Shown: positions 6,150 to 48,004 of the stretch, piece after piece | How positions within the stretch are numbered: the stretch's first letter is position 1 | Layout of the letters: every line of letters begins with the position of its first letter | Virus record (IMG/VR): IMGVR_UViG_3300020477_000990 | Span: 186,001-250,000 of that record | Reading direction: 5' to 3' (one strand) | Length of the DNA: 64,000 nt | The notes under the pieces: model-generated | What the model saw: only the letters and a program-made list of their open reading frames with translations | What the model was told of the DNA's origin: nothing | Databases searched by the model: none | Translations under genes and position numbers: made by a program

Positions 6150-6956
6150 GTGGCTAAAAGAGTAAATTACCTTAATAACAAAGATATGTTGGCTGAAATT
6201 CATAAGAGTAAAACCTCTTATTGCCATTATACAAAGCCAGAATATCAGCAATATGACATAATTTTACCAAGTATTTCAAAGATTAATAGGCTAACAATAT
6301 CACAAGCACGTAAGAACCATGCAGAAAGATTACTTCAAATTAAAGTAGATGAGCTTGGGCTAAAAAGATCACAATATGATGAATATAGAGTTGATCATAA
6401 AACAATACCTGTAACTTCTTTAATTTTTAGAGTAATGACATATGATCATATTCCAGATGAACCGGGGCGTAAATTAAATCCAAAAACTGTTGCTGACACA
6501 AAAGTTAAATTAAATTTTCCACCATTTAAACATTATAAGTTAAACAAAAATGGACAACCTTTTGAAGTAGGAAAAAGCCATTATAGAAATCATAATGAAT
6601 TTTGTTTAGATCATGGAAAAATTACACCAAAGTTAGCTACTATGTTTATTAAGTTATGCCATAGATATGGTACACGAGCTAACTGGCGAGGATATACGTA
6701 TAACGATGAAATGCAAGGACAAGCATTGTTACAATTATCACAAATTGGTTTACAATTTGATGAGTCAAAATCACAAAATCCATTTGCTTATTATACAGCA
6801 ACAATTACAAACTCATTTACAAGAGTTTTGAATATGGAAAAGAAAAATCAAAATTTAAGAGATGACTTGTTACAAGAGGCAGGAGTAATGCCATCCTTAA
6901 CAAGACAAATGCAAAACGAAGAAAAGCAGAAAGAACCACCCAAGGAAACTAAATGA
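6150..6956 (+). CDS. gp55: Late transcription sigma factor, T4 gp55-like
   Basis: N-terminal 'NYLNNKDML.EI' and 'NPFAYYT..I.NSF.R.LN.EKK'; upstream of gp47/gp46 as in T4-like phages. Confidence 0.8.
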   Translation: MAKRVNYLNNKDMLAEIHKSKTSYCHYTKPEYQQYDIILPSISKINRLTISQARKNHAERLLQIKVDELGLKRSQYDEYRVDHKTIPVTSLIFRVMTYDHIPDEPGRKLNPKTVADTKVKLNFPPFKHYKLNKNGQPFEVGKSHYRNHNEFCLDHGKITPKLATMFIKLCHRYGTRANWRGYTYNDEMQGQALLQLSQIGLQFDESKSQNPFAYYTATITNSFTRVLNMEKKNQNLRDDLLQEAGVMPSLTRQMQNEEKQKEPPKETK

Positions 6957-7963
6957 CGTTATTTAAAAAGGCGGCGTGTTTTACTGACATACACTTTGGT
7001 ATGAAAAACAATGCTAGGCAACATAACATAGATTGTGAAAATTTTGTCAAATGGTTTATAGAAGAAGCTAAAGAACGTGGATGCGAAACCTGTTTCTTTT
7101 TAGGCGATTGGCACCACCAAAGATCCGCAATTAATATTTCAACATTAAATTATTCAATATCAAATTTAAAAAGATTAAATGAATCTTTTGAAAAAGTTTA
7201 TTTTATTGTTGGTAATCATGATTTATTTTATAGAGATAAACGTGAGATATCTTCAGTAGTATTTGCTAATGAACTTGCAAATATTAAAGTAGTTGATGAA
7301 TGGATTGTTGAAGATGAAGTTGCTATTATACCATGGTTAGTAGGTGATGAATGGAAACAAATTAAAAAAATGAAATGTAAGTATATGTTTGGTCATTTTG
7401 AATTGCCACATTTTAAAATGAACGCAATGGTAGAGATGCCAGATATAGGAACAATACGAAGTGACCATTTTAAAAATGTTGGTCAAGTGTTTACAGGACA
7501 TTTTCATAAAAGACAACATTCAGGGAATATTTCTTATATTGGAAATCCTTTTCCTCATAACTTTGCAGATGTTTGGGATGATGACCGTGGAGCAATGTTT
7601 TTAGAATGGGACCAAAAACCAGAATATAGAATTTGGCCTGACGCACCTAGATATAGATCAATTAATTTAAGCAAGTTATTAGAAGACCCAGAAACAGTTT
7701 TAGAACCAAATTCTTATATAAGAGTAAAAGTAGATTTAGATATTTCATATGAAGAAGCAAATTTTATTAAAGAAAATTTTGCACAAAATTATGATATTAG
7801 AGATTTATCTTTAATACCGCAGAAAAAAGAAGAACACGCACAAGAAGTAGAAGGTGAGATTATATTTGAATCAGTTGATCAAATAGTAACAAATCAATTA
7901 TCAAAAATAGAATCTGATACTTTTGAAAATAATGTGCTAATTGAGATTTACAATAATTTATGA
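6953..7963 (+). CDS. gp47: Recombination endonuclease, Mre11/SbcD-like
   Basis: Phosphoesterase motifs DIHFG, GDWHH, GNHD, GHF, GHFH. Confidence 0.92.
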   Translation: MTLFKKAACFTDIHFGMKNNARQHNIDCENFVKWFIEEAKERGCETCFFLGDWHHQRSAINISTLNYSISNLKRLNESFEKVYFIVGNHDLFYRDKREISSVVFANELANIKVVDEWIVEDEVAIIPWLVGDEWKQIKKMKCKYMFGHFELPHFKMNAMVEMPDIGTIRSDHFKNVGQVFTGHFHKRQHSGNISYIGNPFPHNFADVWDDDRGAMFLEWDQKPEYRIWPDAPRYRSINLSKLLEDPETVLEPNSYIRVKVDLDISYEEANFIKENFAQNYDIRDLSLIPQKKEEHAQEVEGEIIFESVDQIVTNQLSKIESDTFENNVLIEIYNNL

Positions 7964-9792
7964 TTAAATTACAAAACATAACTATTAAAAATTTTATGAG
8001 TGTAGGTAATACTACTCAAGCAGTTAATTTTTCCCATGATGGACTTACACTAGTTCTTGGTAATAATTTAGACTTGGGTGGTGAAGGTTCTAGAAATGGT
8101 ACTGGAAAAACTACACTTATAAATGCTCTAAGCTATGCAATATATGGACAAGCACTTACAAATATTCGTAAGGACAATCTTGTTAATAAAACTAACAATA
8201 AAAACATGATTGTTACTGTGGATTTTGAAAAGGATGGTCACAAGTATAGATTAGAGAGAGGACGTAAGCCTAATAAATTCCAATTCATTGTTGACGATGC
8301 CGTTGTAAACGAGCAAGGTACAGATGAAGCACAAGGAGAAAATAGACTTACGCAAGATGAGGTGTTGAGGGTATTTGACATGAGCCACACCATGTTTAAA
8401 CATATTGTTGCCCTCAACACTTACACCGAACCATTTTTAGCAATGAAATCAAATGACCAACGTTCTATTATTGAAGAATTGTTAGGTATATTAAGGTTAA
8501 GTGAAAAAGCAGAAGTATTAAAAGAAAGAATTCGAGAAGTTAATGATGATATAAAAACTGAACAAGCACGATTAGAACAAATTAAAATATCAAATGAAAA
8601 AATTGAAGATACTATTAGAAAGTTTCATATTAAAAGTATTGCTTGGGAAGAGTCACATAAAAAAGCAATTACAGAACTTACTAATGGTATTATAGAATTA
8701 GAAAAAATAGATATTAATAGTGAAATTGAAAAACATAAATTACTAACATTATGGCAAGAACAATCTCAAAAAATTAAATCATATACACAAAATCTAAACT
8801 TTAATAAAAGTAATATAGTTGCTGTACAGAAGCAAATAGACTCTTTAAACACACAATTAAACACACTTGATGGTAAGCAATGCCCTATGTGTGAACAAGA
8901 ATTGCATACAGAGAAGCATACGCACTTGGTTGATGACGTTAAGGTACAACATACTGCTAAACTTGAAGAAGAAACACAAATACAATCAACAATAGAGTCA
9001 ATTGAAAAGCAAATTGCTGAACAAGGAGATATTGGTGAAAGGCCGGAAACAGCATACAGTTCAGCTGATGAGGCATATCAACATAGGCAAAATCTTGCAG
9101 AGTTAAAAACACAATTAGAAACAGAACAGCAAAAAGAAAATCCTCATACAGAACAAATTAATACTTTAAAAACTAAAAATATAGAAGAAGTTGATTATGC
9201 ACAAATTAATTCTTTAACAAAACTAAAAGATCATCAAGACTTTTTATATAAATTATTAACATCAAAAGATTCATTTATACGTAAAAAAATTATTGATCAA
9301 AACTTATTATATTTGAATTCAAGATTAAATTATTATTTGGATAAAATTGGTTTGCCTCATGAGGTTGTGTTTAAATCAGATTTATCTGTAGAAATTACTG
9401 AACTAGGACGAGAGTTAGACTTTGATAACTTATCTAGAGGTGAACGTAATAGACTTATACTTGGTTTAAGTTGGGCATTTAGAGATGTGTATGAATCAAT
9501 GAATACTACTGTAAACTTATTGTTTATTGACGAACTTGTAGATTCTGGTATGGATACAATGGGTGTAGAGTCAGCAATGTCGGTATTGAAAAAAATGTCT
9601 AGAGAACGTAGTAAAAATGTTTTCTTAATTTCACACAGAGATGAGCTAACATCTAGATGTTCTAATGTATTAAATGTTGTTAAAGAAAATGGATTTACAT
9701 CATTTGCTACAGACATTGAAACTGTAAGTCATAAATCACATCCTGATTTGTTTAAGGAAAAAGCAAATGAGCACGATACAGTTAGCACCTAA
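7960..9792 (+). CDS. gp46: Recombination ATPase, Rad50/SbcC-like
   Basis: Walker A NGTGKTT, coiled coil with CPMC zinc hook, LSRGE signature, LFIDE Walker B. Confidence 0.93.
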   Translation: MIKLQNITIKNFMSVGNTTQAVNFSHDGLTLVLGNNLDLGGEGSRNGTGKTTLINALSYAIYGQALTNIRKDNLVNKTNNKNMIVTVDFEKDGHKYRLERGRKPNKFQFIVDDAVVNEQGTDEAQGENRLTQDEVLRVFDMSHTMFKHIVALNTYTEPFLAMKSNDQRSIIEELLGILRLSEKAEVLKERIREVNDDIKTEQARLEQIKISNEKIEDTIRKFHIKSIAWEESHKKAITELTNGIIELEKIDINSEIEKHKLLTLWQEQSQKIKSYTQNLNFNKSNIVAVQKQIDSLNTQLNTLDGKQCPMCEQELHTEKHTHLVDDVKVQHTAKLEEETQIQSTIESIEKQIAEQGDIGERPETAYSSADEAYQHRQNLAELKTQLETEQQKENPHTEQINTLKTKNIEEVDYAQINSLTKLKDHQDFLYKLLTSKDSFIRKKIIDQNLLYLNSRLNYYLDKIGLPHEVVFKSDLSVEITELGRELDFDNLSRGERNRLILGLSWAFRDVYESMNTTVNLLFIDELVDSGMDTMGVESAMSVLKKMSRERSKNVFLISHRDELTSRCSNVLNVVKENGFTSFATDIETVSHKSHPDLFKEKANEHDTVST

Positions 9793-10924
9793 TAATTTAG
9801 CATATAAATTTGAAAGTCCTGGAAGATATGCTACTCATGTAAATTATCTTAATGGACATAATAGTTATGATATTATAGAATTTAATTCTTATTTAGATAA
9901 GCCATATCATCTTAATGATAGTTTTAAATTTGTTAATTTAACTAAATTAAAAAATCCAAATACCAGAGTATTAATAAGTCATATAAGAGAACGTTTAAAT
10001 TCTGATAGTAGTATATTACGAGGCCAGGCAGTTTTTATTGATTGGTTAGTGCAAAGCGAAGTATGTAAGGCAGAGCAAATTTTATATATTGTTGGATGTC
10101 AAACTGAACAAGATTTTTTACAAGAGTATACACAGGCTTGTTTAAAAGAACATACATTCCAACATAAAATAAAAATATTATCATATCCTCATTTTGAAAC
10201 TGATGCTGTTTGGCGTATGTATCAAGAAGGATTATCTATTGCAAATAGAAATTATGATGAACTAAAAACATTTGTTAAAAAAGATTTTTTATTTTTAAAT
10301 GCAAAAATACATAAAGCTAATAGAATTAATTTAGCAGTTGATTTGTTTCAACGTGGAATTTTAGATAATGGAATTTACTCTTTAAATACAAGTCATACAA
10401 GTACTGAACTTTATCCTTTAGTACAACACTTAATAGATCAATATTCATTTGGTCATTTTTATAGTAATATCCCACATAGTCCAGATAATATTGAGTACGA
10501 TAGTGAGTCGGACCATTATTTAGGTTATCCTTTTGATTATACTTTATATGAAAAAACAAAATATAGTTTAGTCGCAGAAACTCATTATGAAAATAATCCT
10601 TTTTTATTAACAGAAAAAACAGCAAGACCTATTTTAAATAAGCACCCTTTTGTTATAGCCAGTACGGTTGGTTTTTTAAAACAATTACATGAATTTGGAT
10701 ATCATACTTTTAATGAACTATGGCCAGAAGAATATGATTTAGAAACTGATACAACAAAACGTTTAAGCCTTGTTGCAGATACAGTTGAATACATAAACAA
10801 TAATACTGTTGATTGGATTTACGCATATCAAATCTCTAAGGAGAATTATACAACCCTGCAGAGGAGATATGATAGAAGTGTTAGACTATTAACAGAATGC
10901 CTTAGCGGTTCTTTTCGGATTTAG
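9767..10924 (+). CDS. Hypothetical protein, possibly glycosyltransferase-like
   Basis: C-terminal 'VAETH...FLLTEKT.RPI....PFVI' resembles GT10-like C-termini; weak. Confidence 0.4.
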   Translation: MSTIQLAPNNLAYKFESPGRYATHVNYLNGHNSYDIIEFNSYLDKPYHLNDSFKFVNLTKLKNPNTRVLISHIRERLNSDSSILRGQAVFIDWLVQSEVCKAEQILYIVGCQTEQDFLQEYTQACLKEHTFQHKIKILSYPHFETDAVWRMYQEGLSIANRNYDELKTFVKKDFLFLNAKIHKANRINLAVDLFQRGILDNGIYSLNTSHTSTELYPLVQHLIDQYSFGHFYSNIPHSPDNIEYDSESDHYLGYPFDYTLYEKTKYSLVAETHYENNPFLLTEKTARPILNKHPFVIASTVGFLKQLHEFGYHTFNELWPEEYDLETDTTKRLSLVADTVEYINNNTVDWIYAYQISKENYTTLQRRYDRSVRLLTECLSGSFRI

Positions 10925-11315
10925 TTACCATTACCTAAGAGATAAAATCATTTTGATTAATGATTGTATTGCATCATACAGAACCAGTCATAACTCACCC
11001 TGTTACGGGATGAGTCATTTTCGGCATCATACGAGACCACGCCATTCTAACTTTACAATCCTAAGGAAGCGGTTGGCCGGTACTCCCATCAATTGCGTCT
11101 CATCCAACGGAACTAAAATGTGTAAAGTAAGTTAGCACTACACACCTAGCTGAAGTTGTATCTTTTTCACAGAGCTTCATCGTTTAGCAGATATTAGCCT
11201 TTAGTCGCAACATCAGATTCACCATCATGAAGACGCATTTCTGAGATATTTCTATCAAGTAAGGTTGCTATGTAAGTTGATATTAGTTGATATTAGCCTT
11301 TATTAGCCTTATTGT
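10925..11315 (-). ncRNA. Putative large structured non-coding RNA of unknown family
   Basis: Intergenic gap richer in GC than its flanks, with no credible ORF; own promoter; hairpin 10990-11018; long-range complement 11094-11103/11227-11237; GCATCATAC direct repeat; ends approximate. Confidence 0.6.
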
Positions 11316-11321
11316 TATTAA

Positions 11322-11351
11322 AGTATAAGATTAAATTGGGTGTTTTGTCAA
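11322..11351 (-). promoter_or_regulatory. sigma70-like promoter firing leftward into the non-coding gap
   Basis: Minus strand TTGACA-18-TATACT with no ORF downstream. Confidence 0.7.
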
Positions 11352-11369
11352 GAGGAAAATTAAAAAATA

Positions 11370-11398
11370 TTGACTAATTGTGAAAATAGTTGTATAGT
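11370..11398 (+). promoter_or_regulatory. sigma70-like promoter (divergent)
   Basis: TTGACT-17-TATAGT, 10 nt before ATG 11409. Confidence 0.7.
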
Positions 11399-11408
11399 AT
11401 TATTATAA

Positions 11409-11705
11409 ATGACGAAAGATACAGTAATATCTAACATATATGGTGAAGATGAAAATGGGAATCCTATATTCATAGATAGGATTTATGGAGATAAAAATAC
11501 ACAAAGACTTATACAAAAAGATGGGTCTGAATATAAAGGTAGTATAACTAAACGTAGAATTATAGTAAAAAGAAGTAATGGAGATAGTTTTACATCACAC
11601 GTACATGAAACAGCAGACGGAAGATGGTTTGATAGAGGTGGTATGCCAATTGATAAACCAAAGAATTTAGATACTAGAAAAAAAGAAGAGGAAACACAAG
11701 AGTGA
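11409..11705 (+). CDS. Hypothetical protein
   Basis: 98-aa ORF behind promoter, overlapping next gene start. Confidence 0.6.
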   Translation: MTKDTVISNIYGEDENGNPIFIDRIYGDKNTQRLIQKDGSEYKGSITKRRIIVKRSNGDSFTSHVHETADGRWFDRGGMPIDKPKNLDTRKKEEETQE

Positions 11706-46874: not shown

Positions 46875-46903
46875 TTGACAAATTGAAAAATAATAAATAT
46901 ACT
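46875..46903 (+). promoter_or_regulatory. Overlapping early and late promoters for gp32
   Basis: TTGACA-17-TATACT with TAAATA embedded at 46894-46899. Confidence 0.8.
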
Positions 46904-46936
46904 AGTAGATAATGTTTATAGAAACATTATTTACAG

Positions 46937-46990
46937 AGGCTAACATAGGCAATTATAGGCTAATATTTACAAAAGGAGGCAATTATGGCT
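46937..46990 (+). repeat. 10-nt phased AGGC(T/A)A repeats in gp32 leader
   Basis: AGGC at 46937, 46947, 46957, 46977 (last inside the SD). Confidence 0.8.
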
Positions 46991-48004
46991 ACATTGGCAC
47001 AAATTAGAGCAAAGCTTCAAGAACAAGAAGTAAAACGTTCACCGAACGCCACAGGAGGCGACAACGCAATTTATCCGTTCTGGAATATTCCTGAAGGTAC
47101 AACAGCAACATTAAGATTTCTAGCAGACAAAGATCAGAATAATACTTTTTTCTGGGTAGAAAGACAAATGATTAAATTACCATTTGCTGGAATTAAAGGA
47201 CAATCAGAAGCAAAACCAACTTTGGTACAAGTTCCTTGTATGGAGATGTGGGGAGAACCATGTCCAGTATTAAGTGAAATTAGACCATGGTTTAAAGATC
47301 CACAATTGGAAGATATGGGTAGAAAATATTGGAAGAAAAGAAGTTATATATTCCAAGGTTTTGTTGTAAATTCTCCACTTGATGAAGATACAACACCAGA
47401 AAATCCGATTAGACGTTTTGTAATTAATCCGTCAATCTTTAATATTATTAGATCAGCATTGATGAATCCAGAAATGGAAGATCTTCCAACTGATTTAGAT
47501 AAAGGTAGAGAGTTTAAATTAACTAAAACTCAAAAAGGTGGGTATGCTGACTATTCAACATCATCTTGGTCTTTCAAAGAAAGAGCATTGCAAGATAGCG
47601 AACGTCAAGCAATTAACACTAATGGGTTATATACTCTTAGTGATTATCTTCCTAAGAAACCTTCTTCAGAAGATGTTAAAATTATCGCAGAAATGTTTAA
47701 AGCATCTGTTGATGGTGAGTTGTATGATGAAAGCAGATTTGGTCAATATTACAGACCAGCTGGAATGGCATCAACACCTAAAACTGTACAAGCAACTACA
47801 ACAACTACAACTGCACCAGCGGCACCAGTTGTTGAAACTGCAACAGCACCAGCACCAGTAACACCGGTTCAAACTGCACCAGCACCAGCGGCACAGCCAG
47901 AAGTGGCTACTGCAACTGCAACTGCAAGTGCACCAGCATCGGATGGTTCTAAAGCATCAGCTGAAGATATTTTAGCAATGATTAGATCAAGGCAAAACAA
48001 ATAA
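46985..48004 (+). CDS. gp32: Single-stranded DNA-binding protein
   Basis: 'LRFL.D', 'C...WGE.CP', 'YWKK.SY', 'GY.DYS.S.W'; long A/T/P linker. Confidence 0.9.
   Translation: MATLAQIRAKLQEQEVKRSPNATGGDNAIYPFWNIPEGTTATLRFLADKDQNNTFFWVERQMIKLPFAGIKGQSEAKPTLVQVPCMEMWGEPCPVLSEIRPWFKDPQLEDMGRKYWKKRSYIFQGFVVNSPLDEDTTPENPIRRFVINPSIFNIIRSALMNPEMEDLPTDLDKGREFKLTKTQKGGYADYSTSSWSFKERALQDSERQAINTNGLYTLSDYLPKKPSSEDVKIIAEMFKASVDGELYDESRFGQYYRPAGMASTPKTVQATTTTTTAPAAPVVETATAPAPVTPVQTAPAPAAQPEVATATATASAPASDGSKASAEDILAMIRSRQNK

What the first reader, a model, noticed from the sequence alone, without database searches (positions are those of the whole stretch)
10925..11351. Promoter-driven ~390-nt structured RNA in a 'gap' between genes
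Seen: a leftward TTGACA-18-TATACT promoter (11351-11322) points into ~390 nt with no credible ORF that is visibly richer in G/C than its flanks. On the minus strand it can fold: AUGACUCA-UCCC-GUAACA-GGG-UGAGUUAU (10990-11018), flanked by a GUAUGAUGC direct repeat (10971-10979, 11024-11032); a long-range helix UGCGUCU(U)CAU/AUGAGACGCA (11227-11237 with 11094-11103); and UGAAG...UGUG-AAAAAGA-UACA...CUUCA. The 5' end is a 10-nt-period repeat (AAGGCUAAUA x2, UCAACUAAUA, UCAACUUACA). I do not recognise tmRNA, RNase P, SRP, riboswitch or intron signatures. Inference: an unannotated phage ncRNA, or an R-loop-priming origin transcript as at T4 origins.
Basis: partly seen in the sequence, partly recalled or inferred. 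Interest (0 to 1): 0.85.

Follow-up and report, generated by a model that had tools for sequence, protein, structure and literature searches.

The report
New pseudoknotted RNA in marine phages
The gap holds a real, promoter-driven, roughly 350-375-base structured non-coding RNA, conserved in uncultured marine giant T4-like phages and matching no described RNA family; its 5' tail copies the repeat array in the leader of the phage's single-stranded-DNA-binding protein gene, which suggests a link to that gene's self-regulation.

Summary
Window 10940-11351 (minus strand) carries a sigma-70-type promoter conserved in 65 unique relatives. Behind it lies an RNA whose helices keep pairing through many compensatory changes. 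In the core domain 97.6% of cells are paired, against 34-48% when partners are slid, and 16 of 25 pairs show two-sided changes.

The core is an H-type pseudoknot around an invariant 14-nt joiner. There is no ORF, no codon periodicity, no tRNA or tmRNA, and no Rfam match, even at E = 1-10 and in five divergent homologs. All relatives come from marine viral or metagenome contigs. The gene neighbourhood is variable and the element's orientation flips.

A new observation: the 5' tail consists of 2-4 copies of a 10-nt unit, AGGC(A/U)AAYAU. In 1.5 Mb of related DNA, arrays of this unit occur only there and in the gene 32 (gp32-like SSB) leader, between a hairpin and the ribosome-binding site. That layout parallels the T4 gene 32 operator.

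Best reading: a stand-alone phage ncRNA coupled to the gp32 autoregulatory circuit. What the folded body does is unknown.

The parts
11322..11351 (-). Sigma-70-type promoter: -35 TTGACA at 11351-11346, 18-nt spacer, -10 TATACT at 11327-11322. The transcription start is inferred near 11314.
   Evidence: Best match in the scan. TTGAC is found in 65 of 65 unique relatives; 44 have a -10-like hexamer after 18 nt, with a variable spacer sequence.
11269..11310 (-). 5' tail: 10-nt units (AAGGCUAAUA twice, then degenerate UCAACUAAUA and UCAACUUACA). It is about 26% G+C. It runs in register into the 5' strand of helix Pa.
   Evidence: Relatives carry 2-4 AGGC units, the first 7-12 nt after the -10, mostly spaced 10-11 nt. 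The last unit lies 9-12 nt before the AGC of Pa in 49 of 64 sequences. The same array occurs in the g32 leader.
11207..11268 (-). Domain 1. Closing helix Pa (GCAAC 11268-11264 with GUUGC 11211-11207) encloses the GNRA hairpin Hb (11256-11245, GAUA-GAAA-UAUC) and hairpin Hc (11244-11213, UCAGA/UCUGA plus CGUC/GAUG).
   Evidence: All 5 pairs of Pa are paired in 61 of 61 sequences, with AU/GC and AU/UA exchanges. The outer helix of Hc has up to five pair types per position. Hb is missing in one lineage.
11180..11202 (-). Single-stranded joiner carrying a further AAGGCUAAUA unit. The other clade has two AGGCA units here.
   Evidence: The unit type (AGGCU or AGGCA) matches the type in the tail of the same clade.
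11151..11179 (-). Hairpin Hd: UGAAG/CUUCA, an inner UGU/ACA, and an A-rich loop ending in the invariant CAAC.
   Evidence: At least 8 distinct complementary outer stems occur among relatives. The inner pair switches between U-A and C-G.
11113..11149 (-). Hairpin S1, a 10-11-bp stem. Its loop holds the 5' strand of the pseudoknot (CUAACUU, 11135-11129).
   Evidence: All four inner S1 pairs show two-sided changes.
11100..11113 (-). Joiner GUUCCGUUGGAUGA inside the pseudoknot. Its last 11 nt are invariant in every relative, but that 11-mer was part of the search pattern; its invariance among relatives found through the neighbouring protein is independent of the pattern.
   Evidence: Invariant columns in A1 and A2. 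No complementary target was found in the window.
11055..11096 (-). Hairpin Hy: outer helix (C)AAUU/GAUUG, middle helix GGGAGU/GCUUCC, inner GG/CC with a CCAA loop.
   Evidence: The outer 5 bp and middle 6 bp are paired in 61 of 61 sequences, with GC/CG, GC/AU and AU/GC exchanges.
11047..11053 (-). 3' strand of the pseudoknot (AAGUUAG), pairing with 11135-11129.
   Evidence: All 7 bp are paired in 61 of 61 sequences in the curated alignment, and 5 pairs show two-sided changes.
11023..11043 (-). Variable hairpin Hf, containing the first copy of the direct repeat (GUAUGAUGC, 11032-11024).
   Evidence: Stems are lineage-specific, and one lineage has a 30-nt expansion.
10994..11014 (-). Hairpin He: CUCAUCCC-GUAACA-GGGUGAG.
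   Evidence: Three invariant C-G pairs plus covarying outer pairs (UA/CG).
10965..10980 (-). Second copy of the direct repeat (10979-10971) within a possible small hairpin Hg.
   Evidence: The two copies share lineage-specific versions: GUAUGAU, UGGUAAU, CUAAUAG, GAUAAU.
10940..10965 (-). Candidate weak intrinsic terminator: AAUCAUU-AAUCAA-AAUGAUU followed by UUAUCU. The 3' end is not determined.
   Evidence: Only 39 of 64 relatives have any hairpin plus U-rich tail within 170 nt, at varying positions.
46875..46984 (+). Linked feature: the gene 32 leader. It has a twin promoter (TTGACA-17-TATACT, 46875-46903), a 13-bp hairpin, three AGGC(U/A)AAYAU units (46937-46966) and the SD AAGGAGGC, ahead of the gp32-like SSB gene (46985-48004).
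   Evidence: Gene identity rests on phrog_1192 at E = 3.7e-65 and Pfam gp32 at E = 3.5e-5, which is below the cutoff. The same leader layout occurs in related phages.

Best explanation
Shown: a stand-alone non-coding RNA gene of uncultured marine giant T4-like phages. A conserved sigma-70-type promoter drives a minus-strand transcript of roughly 350-375 nt. The order of parts is as follows. (1) An unstructured 5' tail of 2-4 ten-nucleotide AGGC(A/U)AAYAU units. (2) A three-helix domain closed by helix Pa. (3) A joiner with one or two more AGGC units. (4) An A-rich-loop hairpin. (5) An H-type pseudoknot around an invariant 14-nt joiner. (6) Three 3' hairpins, including two copies of a short repeat that evolve in concert. 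Inferred: the tail is a second copy of the protein-binding lattice found in the phage's gene 32 mRNA leader between a hairpin and the ribosome-binding site. In T4, gp32 nucleates at a folded element, spreads cooperatively over short repeats and covers the RBS. By analogy, the same factor, most likely free gp32, would coat the ncRNA tail. Because the lattice runs in register into the 5' strand of helix Pa, coating would open domain 1. The fold and activity of the RNA would then be gated by the pool of free gp32, that is, by replication status. To a lesser degree the RNA would also compete with the g32 leader for the repressor. What the pseudoknotted body binds or does is not known. The invariant joiner and the two concerted repeats look like sites for a partner acting in trans.
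For: A real RNA on this strand. The promoter is conserved over a variable spacer. In the core, 97.6% of cells are paired against 34-48% when partners are slid, 16 of 25 pairs have two-sided changes, and 0 of 500 shuffles reach the observed values. Pa, PK and Hy are paired in 61 of 61 sequences, and Hd has at least 8 stem versions. Invariant G-U pairs favour the sense strand (93.8% against 83.8%). There is no coding signal. The element is single-copy and conserved while its neighbours and orientation change. Link to gene 32. In the 64-kb window, tandem AGGC arrays occur only in the tail and in the g32 leader, both behind TTGACA-N17/18-TATACT promoters. In 1.52 Mb of related DNA, triple arrays are 13 unique RNA tails, 8 unique g32 leaders and 1 chance site inside an ORF. 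Of 104 unique g32 leaders, 86 have at least 2 AGGC and 49 have a tandem pair, against 1.4% of background windows. In most leaders (57 of 93) the last unit lies 8-12 nt before the AUG and, in the leaders read, merges with the SD; in the RNA the last unit lies 9-12 nt before Pa. The T4 operator architecture is described in PMC535899.
Against: No binding data exist, and the factor that reads AGGC units is unidentified. It could be RegA-like, host S1, or the 30S subunit itself. From textbook knowledge, gp32 occupies about 7 nt per monomer, not 10, and is very abundant, so 3-5 sites per RNA make a poor sponge. The order of parts differs: in the leader the fold is followed by the repeats, and in the ncRNA the repeats are followed by the fold. 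The AGGC-type g32 leader is far more widespread than the RNA, so the circuit works without it. The match of unit type (AGGCU or AGGCA) between RNA and leader could be checked in only two genomes. Transcription and the RNA ends are inferred, not observed.
Confidence: 0.45

Rival explanations
1. A structured ncRNA (a ribozyme, an RNP scaffold, or a self-assembling RNA like GOLLD and ROOL) whose function has nothing to do with gp32. In this reading the AGGC units are a generic 5' module that both transcripts happen to share, for example a stabiliser against 5'-end-dependent decay, or an S1 or 30S standby site.
For: The fold is complex and conserved, with an invariant joiner and GNRA and A-rich loops typical of tertiary contacts. 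The units resemble partial Shine-Dalgarno sequences, and the last one forms the SD in g32. The RNA is absent from most phages that have AGGC-type g32 leaders.
Against: The array occurs in only two kinds of place in 1.5 Mb, not at other strongly expressed genes of the window such as structural genes. A translational standby site has no obvious use on an RNA without an ORF.
Confidence: 0.25
2. An origin-of-replication transcript. The promoter fires into an A+T-rich repeat tract that acts as an unwinding element. The RNA forms a persistent R-loop that primes leading-strand synthesis, as at T4 oriF and oriG or with ColE1 RNA II. The displaced strand, which carries the same AGGC units, loads gp32 and the helicase loader.
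For: A strong conserved promoter is followed at once by about 45 bp at 26% G+C with a 10-11-bp periodic repeat. The same units sit beside gene 32, next to uvsX and uvsY, and T4 oriF lies in uvsY (T4 origins from textbook knowledge). The element's orientation is free relative to its neighbours.
Against: There is no GC-skew inflection at 11 kb. About 300 nt of covarying helices and a pseudoknot downstream argue that selection acts on a free folded RNA. The AGGC units always lie on the sense strand and merge with the SD in g32, which points to RNA-level reading.
Confidence: 0.1
3. An anti-defence decoy RNA that mimics a host or phage nucleic acid to neutralise a bacterial immune or toxin system, like pseudo-ToxI or RNA anti-CRISPRs.
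For: It lies in a hypervariable region with homing endonucleases, radical SAM proteins and methyltransferases. Two short repeats evolve in concert, as if tracking a partner acting in trans.
Against: There is no similarity to any known antitoxin, CRISPR repeat, tRNA or retron RNA. The core is highly conserved in sequence, unlike most arms-race elements.
Confidence: 0.08
4. A cis-acting leader or riboswitch of a neighbouring gene. Alternatively, a decayed gene, intron or other mobile-element remnant.
For: In some relatives the RNA is co-directional with the next gene (PDDEXK/RusA-like). SegE-like endonucleases are nearby.
Against: In the window and its whole clade, the downstream gene converges on the RNA. 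The neighbours differ among loci. No gene is interrupted and no intron model matches. There is no coding signal.
Confidence: 0.05

Closest known systems
T4/RB69 gene 32 translational operator (a folded pseudoknot, then UUAAA/UAAA repeats, then the RBS; PMC535899)
   Same: A folded element lies beside an unstructured lattice of short repeated units. The window's own g32 leader has exactly this layout, and the ncRNA tail carries the same units.
   Different: The units are 10-nt AGGC(A/U)AAYAU rather than UUAAA. In the ncRNA the lattice comes before the fold rather than after it, ends in a helix strand rather than an RBS, and no gene follows. Binding by gp32 is untested.
Protein-titrating sRNAs (CsrB/RsmZ for CsrA, CrcZ for Hfq/Crc, 6S RNA for RNA polymerase); from my own knowledge
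   Same: A non-coding RNA repeats the motif that a regulator recognises in its mRNA targets.
   Different: There are only 3-5 units per RNA. A large, conserved pseudoknotted body is not needed for titration. The presumed partner, gp32, is far more abundant than CsrA.
Large phage-associated structured RNAs of unknown function (GOLLD, ROOL; Rfam; bioRxiv 10.1101/2024.12.08.627333)
   Same: Large, intricately folded RNAs supported by covariation, found in phage genomes, with no known function.
   Different: There is no match to their models. This RNA is smaller (about 320 nt of fold), is not next to tRNA genes, and has an operator-like tail.
Origin transcripts: T4 oriF/oriG R-loop RNAs and ColE1 RNA II; from my own knowledge
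   Same: A promoter is followed by an easily unwound tract. For RNA II, a defined fold is also needed for function.
   Different: There is no evidence of replication initiation here. Conservation extends 300 nt beyond the A+T-rich tract and includes a pseudoknot.
Candidate structured RNAs mined from IMG/VR, including 12 motifs upstream of GP32 (PMC10690425)
   Same: The same data source. That study also noticed conserved elements in g32 leaders, and fragments of this RNA may be among its 8,495 motifs.
   Different: Those motifs are 29-151 nt long. No full-length RNA, pseudoknot, or link between a free-standing RNA and the g32 leader is described in the main text. The supplementary lists were not available to check.

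Membership tests
Any Rfam 15 family (tmRNA, RNase P, SRP, 6S, group I/II introns, riboswitches, GOLLD, ROOL, OLE, raiA, HEARO, marine IMES/Ocean motifs and others) | A match to the family covariance model at or near its gathering score | tested here: not met
   Zero matches at gathering score in the whole window. At E up to 10 on 10700-11600 there were only three hits, at 13-18 bits, two outside the RNA and one on its promoter/5' tail. Zero matches at E up to 1 in five divergent homologs.
tRNA / tmRNA | A cloverleaf, or a tRNA-like domain with a tag reading frame | tested here: not met
   ARAGORN finds none in the window.
Group I intron | Interrupts a gene, so flanking exons restore an ORF | tested here: not met
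   Upstream of the RNA is a promoter. Downstream is the 3' end of a converging gene. The neighbours differ among loci.
Group I intron | A P3-P9 catalytic core recognised by the intron model, with a P4-P6 domain between P3 and P7 | tested here: not met
   No model match. The pseudoknot strands lie within one hairpin loop, with no domain between them.
Protein-coding gene or pseudogene | A conserved reading frame and third-position variability | tested here: not met
   Stops occur in all frames. Stop-free runs are 36-84 aa in changing frames, and variability by position is 0.224/0.248/0.252.
Cis-regulatory leader / riboswitch | A constant position upstream of one gene family, on the same strand | tested here: not met
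   The downstream neighbour is convergent in the window's clade, and seven or more unrelated gene clusters follow the RNA in other loci.
T4-type gene 32 translational operator | Lies in the 5' leader of gene 32 and includes its RBS | tested here: not met
   The RNA is 35 kb from gene 32 and has no RBS or ORF. The phage's true g32 leader at 46904-46984 does meet this feature.
T4-type gene 32 translational operator | A folded element adjacent to a lattice of short repeated units | tested here: met
   The tail has 2-4 units at a 10-11-nt period, abutting helix Pa. The units are identical in type to those of the g32 leader.
T4-type gene 32 translational operator | Specific cooperative binding of gp32 | not testable with these tools
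   Needs purified protein and RNA.
Protein-sponge sRNA (CsrB/RsmZ type) | Carries multiple copies of the motif present in the regulated mRNA leaders | tested here: met
   There are 3-5 AGGC(A/U) units per RNA (tail plus joiner), and the same units occur in g32 leaders.
Protein-sponge sRNA (CsrB/RsmZ type) | Sequesters the regulator in vivo and derepresses its targets | not testable with these tools
   No cultured host-phage pair and no expression data.
R-loop replication origin (T4 oriF/oriG type) | A promoter followed directly by an A+T-rich unwinding element | tested here: met
   The promoter is at 11351-11322, followed by 42 nt at about 26% G+C.
R-loop replication origin (T4 oriF/oriG type) | Replication starts there (skew switch, coverage peak, or intermediates) | tested here: inconclusive
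   There is no GC-skew switch at 11 kb, but skew in T4-like phages follows transcription, so this test is weak.

The most novel reading that the evidence does not exclude
A new class of about 320-nt pseudoknotted phage RNA that is wired into the SSB (gp32) autoregulatory loop. Free gp32 polymerises on an operator-like 5' tail and melts the closing helix. The RNA's activity, through its invariant joiner and twin repeat sites, would then report or control the replication state of a giant phage. That would make it a protein-gated RNA switch acting in trans, with no described precedent.
Probability: 0.25. Interest if true: 0.85.

Novelty: new variant of a known kind. Interest (0 to 1): 0.72.

Why it matters
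Gene 32 autoregulation is a textbook case of translational control, yet no trans-acting RNA has been tied to it. Here an orphan RNA with an elaborate, strongly covarying fold carries the same repeat lattice as the g32 operator in a whole group of ocean giant phages. Two things become directly testable with synthetic RNA and recombinant protein. First, what reads the AGGC units. Second, whether an SSB can gate the fold of a separate RNA. Independently of that, the RNA is a well-defined new family: about 60 distinct sequences, a pseudoknot and an invariant 14-nt strand. It is suitable for structure determination and for annotation of marine viral contigs, where the region is currently an unexplained gap.

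Tried and rejected
- Rfam at gathering and at permissive E-values, on the window and on five divergent homologs: nothing.
- ARAGORN: nothing.
- blastn in distant mode against 50,697 GenBank phage records: no match, so no cultured phage carries the RNA.
- The genome contigs motif scan gave one hit, in a Fibrobacteres MAG. It lacks every other element and is a chance match.
- A coding reading, including the small ORFs seen in the window, is rejected.
- A constant protein partner next to the RNA is rejected. The 98-aa divergent ORF is limited to one clade, and the neighbours are SegE-like, radical SAM, methyltransferase or unknown.
- A search inside the RNA for a strand complementary to the two concerted repeats found none.
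- A search of the window for a target of the invariant joiner found only chance-level matches.
- A second RNA copy, or a copy near g32, was not found.
- A consistent intrinsic terminator was not found, so the 3' end stays open.
- Attempts to pair more RNA-bearing genomes with their g32 leaders failed, because the gp32 scans hit the 600-stretch limit.
- The supplementary tables of PMC10690425, needed to check prior listing, are not held.
The covariation counts come instead.

Full report
**Setting.** The window is part of IMG/VR contig IMGVR_UViG_3300020477_000990 (328 kb). It encodes T4-type functions: SbcD/SbcC-like gp47/gp46 at 6953-9792, a baseplate hub, a portal, terminase, a gp32-like SSB, UvsX and UvsY. 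Its portal is closest (52-54% identity) to giant phages such as Pseudomonas PA5oct and Agrobacterium Atu_ph07. Overall G+C is 32%. The finding lies between the end of a 385-aa ORF (9767-10924, + strand) and a 98-aa ORF (11409-11705, + strand).

**The observation.** The promoter, the lack of an ORF, the G+C rise, two of the hairpins, the 9-nt direct repeat and the 10-nt 5' repeat are all present as described. The fold energy of the single sequence is only mildly unusual: z = -1.9 on the minus strand and -0.7 on the plus strand. The window alone would therefore not settle the matter.

**Relatives.**
- The neighbouring PDDEXK (RusA-phrog) protein recovered 31 related viral loci. The gap sequence is conserved in 29 of them, at 70-93% identity in close ones and in blocks in distant ones. 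In about half it is inverted relative to that gene.
- An invariant motif taken from the first alignment recovered 35 viral contigs and 74 marine metagenome contigs (Tara and JGI ocean samples). It also gave one chance hit in a bacterial MAG.
- No GenBank phage record matches.
- After removing duplicates there are 65 full-length unique sequences. The curated alignment used for the pair counts holds 64 of them, which reduce to 61 unique rows.

**Promoter and strand.**
- TTGAC, usually as GGTTGAC, is present in all 65 sequences. In 44 of them a -10-like hexamer follows after 18 nt, most often TATACT; in the rest a -10-like hexamer was read by eye at other spacings. The spacer sequence differs between sequences.
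- Invariant G-U pairs in the helices would be C-A mismatches on the other strand. Cells paired are 93.8% on the sense strand against 83.8% on the antisense strand.
- The RNA is therefore read from the window's minus strand, starting near 11314.

**Structure.** RNAalifold on 21 sequences already gave 48 pairs, 20 of them with compensatory changes. A segment-anchored alignment of 64 sequences and per-pair counts define these elements.
- Helix Pa: 5 bp, paired in 61 of 61 sequences, with three positions covarying.
- Hairpin Hb: a GNRA hairpin, absent in one lineage.
- Hairpin Hc.
- Hairpin Hd: its outer stem occurs in at least eight complementary versions.
- Hairpin S1: its loop pairs with a strand about 80 nt downstream (CUAACUU with AAGUUAG). 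Other versions include CCAACUU/AAGUUGG, UCAGCUC/GAGCUGG, UCGAUUU/AAAUUGA and CCAAUUC/GAAUUGG. This is an H-type pseudoknot, with hairpin Hy and an invariant 14-nt joiner inside it.
- Hairpins Hf, He and Hg at the 3' end.

On a 52-sequence MAFFT alignment of the S1-PK-Hy core, the pair counter gave the following.

| Measure | Result |
|---|---|
| Cells paired, structure as given | 97.6% |
| Cells paired, partners slid | 34-48% |
| Pairs with two-sided changes | 16 of 25 |
| Shuffles reaching the observed pairing or covariation score | 0 of 500 |

The only unpaired cells in PK and Hy come from four sequences with a 1-nt indel that MAFFT left misaligned.

**Not coding and not a known RNA.** There is no conserved frame and no 3-nt periodicity. 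There is no tRNA or tmRNA and no Rfam family, even with permissive settings and in divergent homologs. The topology does not fit a group I core, and no gene is interrupted.

**Context.**
- The RNA sits in a plastic region between the hub/PDDEXK module and the SbcCD module.
- Its immediate neighbours vary: small unknown ORFs, a SegE-like GIY-YIG endonuclease, radical SAM proteins and a methyltransferase. Its orientation flips.
- It is single-copy.
- This pattern fits an autonomous gene with its own promoter. It does not fit a leader of another gene.

**The 5' tail and gene 32.**
- The transcript begins almost at once with 2-4 units of AGGC(A/U)AAYAU, spaced 10-11 nt. One or two more units lie in the joiner after Pa.
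- Searching the window for tandem AGGC units gave only one other site, 46937-46966. It lies behind the only other perfect TTGACA...TATACT promoter and a 13-bp hairpin, immediately before the SD (AAGGAGGC) of the gp32-like SSB gene.
- In related phages the g32 leader has the same plan: a promoter, a hairpin of varying sequence, 3-6 AGGC units, then an SD that is itself the last unit.
- Of 104 unique leaders, 86 have at least two AGGC and 49 have a tandem pair, against 1.4% of background windows.
- In 1.52 Mb of related DNA, triple arrays are found only in RNA tails (13 unique) and g32 leaders (8 unique). One further site lies inside an ORF.
- In T4, gp32 represses its own mRNA by nucleating at a 5' pseudoknot and spreading over UUAAA/UAAA repeats to the RBS (PMC535899). 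The leaders seen here are a clear analogue with a different repeat unit. The ncRNA tail is a second copy of that lattice.
- In the RNA, the last unit lies 9-12 nt before the AGC of helix Pa in 49 of 64 sequences, and 19 or 30 nt before it in the rest. The 5' strand of Pa therefore occupies the place that the SD holds in the mRNA.

**Mechanism proposed.**
- Shown: a folded ncRNA, and a repeat lattice shared with the g32 operator region.
- Inferred: the same factor reads both. By the T4 precedent this is most likely free gp32.
- Inferred further: spreading along the tail would invade Pa and remodel domain 1, coupling the RNA's state to the free-SSB pool. Competition with the g32 leader is possible but quantitatively doubtful, given how abundant gp32 is.
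- Unknown: the role of the body. The invariant joiner and the two repeat copies are the best candidate contact sites. The two copies carry the same lineage-specific version in at least five lineages and have no complementary strand inside the RNA.

**Rivals.** Four alternatives are considered:
- an RNA unrelated to gp32, with the AGGC units acting as a generic 5' module;
- an R-loop origin transcript;
- an anti-defence decoy;
- a cis-acting leader or a remnant of a gene or mobile element.

The last is largely excluded by synteny and by the lack of coding or intron signals. The origin idea keeps some appeal, because a promoter fires into a 26% G+C periodic tract. However, it has no positive evidence, and it does not explain selection on a 300-nt pseudoknotted fold.

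**Prior art.** A 2023 survey mined IMG/VR for structured motifs of 29-151 nt and reported 12 motifs upstream of GP32. It noted that Rfam has no g32 operator model (PMC10690425). Pieces of this RNA may be in its lists, which I could not open. I found no description of the full RNA, its pseudoknot, or its link to the g32 leader.

**Verdict.** This is a genuine new structured RNA family of marine giant T4-like phages. As a fold it belongs to no known family. As a system it most resembles an operator mimic or a protein-gated RNA. Confidence that it is a functional ncRNA is about 0.95. Confidence in a functional link to the gp32 circuit is about 0.45. The 3' end, the expression level and the biochemical role remain open.

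Noticed in passing
window 46875-46984 (+): The gene 32 (gp32-like SSB) leader has a T4-operator-like plan with a different repeat: a perfect sigma-70 promoter, a 13-bp hairpin (z = -3.5), three AGGC(U/A)AAYAU units, and the SD AAGGAGGC. The plan is conserved in many related marine phages, with covarying hairpins.
   Followed up: yes
window 11024-11032 and 10971-10979 (-); same columns in L018, L020, L029, L050, L141: The two copies of a short direct repeat flanking hairpin He carry the same lineage-specific sequence in at least five lineages (GUAUGAU, UGGUAAU, CUAAUAG, GAUAAU, AGUAAU). No complementary strand exists inside the RNA. The cause is unexplained: a shared partner acting in trans, or gene conversion.
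   Followed up: partly
window 11370-11398 (+) and 11409-11705 (+): A divergent sigma-70-like promoter (TTGACT-17-TATAGT) lies 19 nt from the RNA's -35 and drives a 98-aa ORF with no Pfam or PHROG match. That ORF family is found only in the window's clade.
   Followed up: partly
L057, L058, L068, L072, L086, L089, L123, L133, L138 (immediately upstream of the RNA): A SegE-like GIY-YIG homing endonuclease (Pfam PF19835, E = 1e-33) sits next to the RNA in one lineage. Radical SAM and methyltransferase genes sit next to it in others. The RNA's orientation relative to the PDDEXK/RusA-like gene is inverted in about half of the loci.
   Followed up: partly
L008 (Hd stem): In one relative the two strands of hairpin Hd do not match (UGAAG against CCCCA), although its nearest relative L007 has GGGG/CCCC. 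This may be a recombinant or an assembly chimera.
   Followed up: no
whole window; contigs of 178-328 kb among the relatives: The RNA-bearing contigs are of giant-phage size, and the portal is nearest to PA5oct and Atu_ph07-type phages (52-54% identity). No cultured phage carries the RNA.
   Followed up: partly
L069 (JAQBPO010000072.1, Fibrobacteres MAG): This is the only hit of the 21-base-specified motif in 596 Gb of prokaryotic genomes. It is a chance match in G+C-rich DNA and has none of the other elements.
   Followed up: yes
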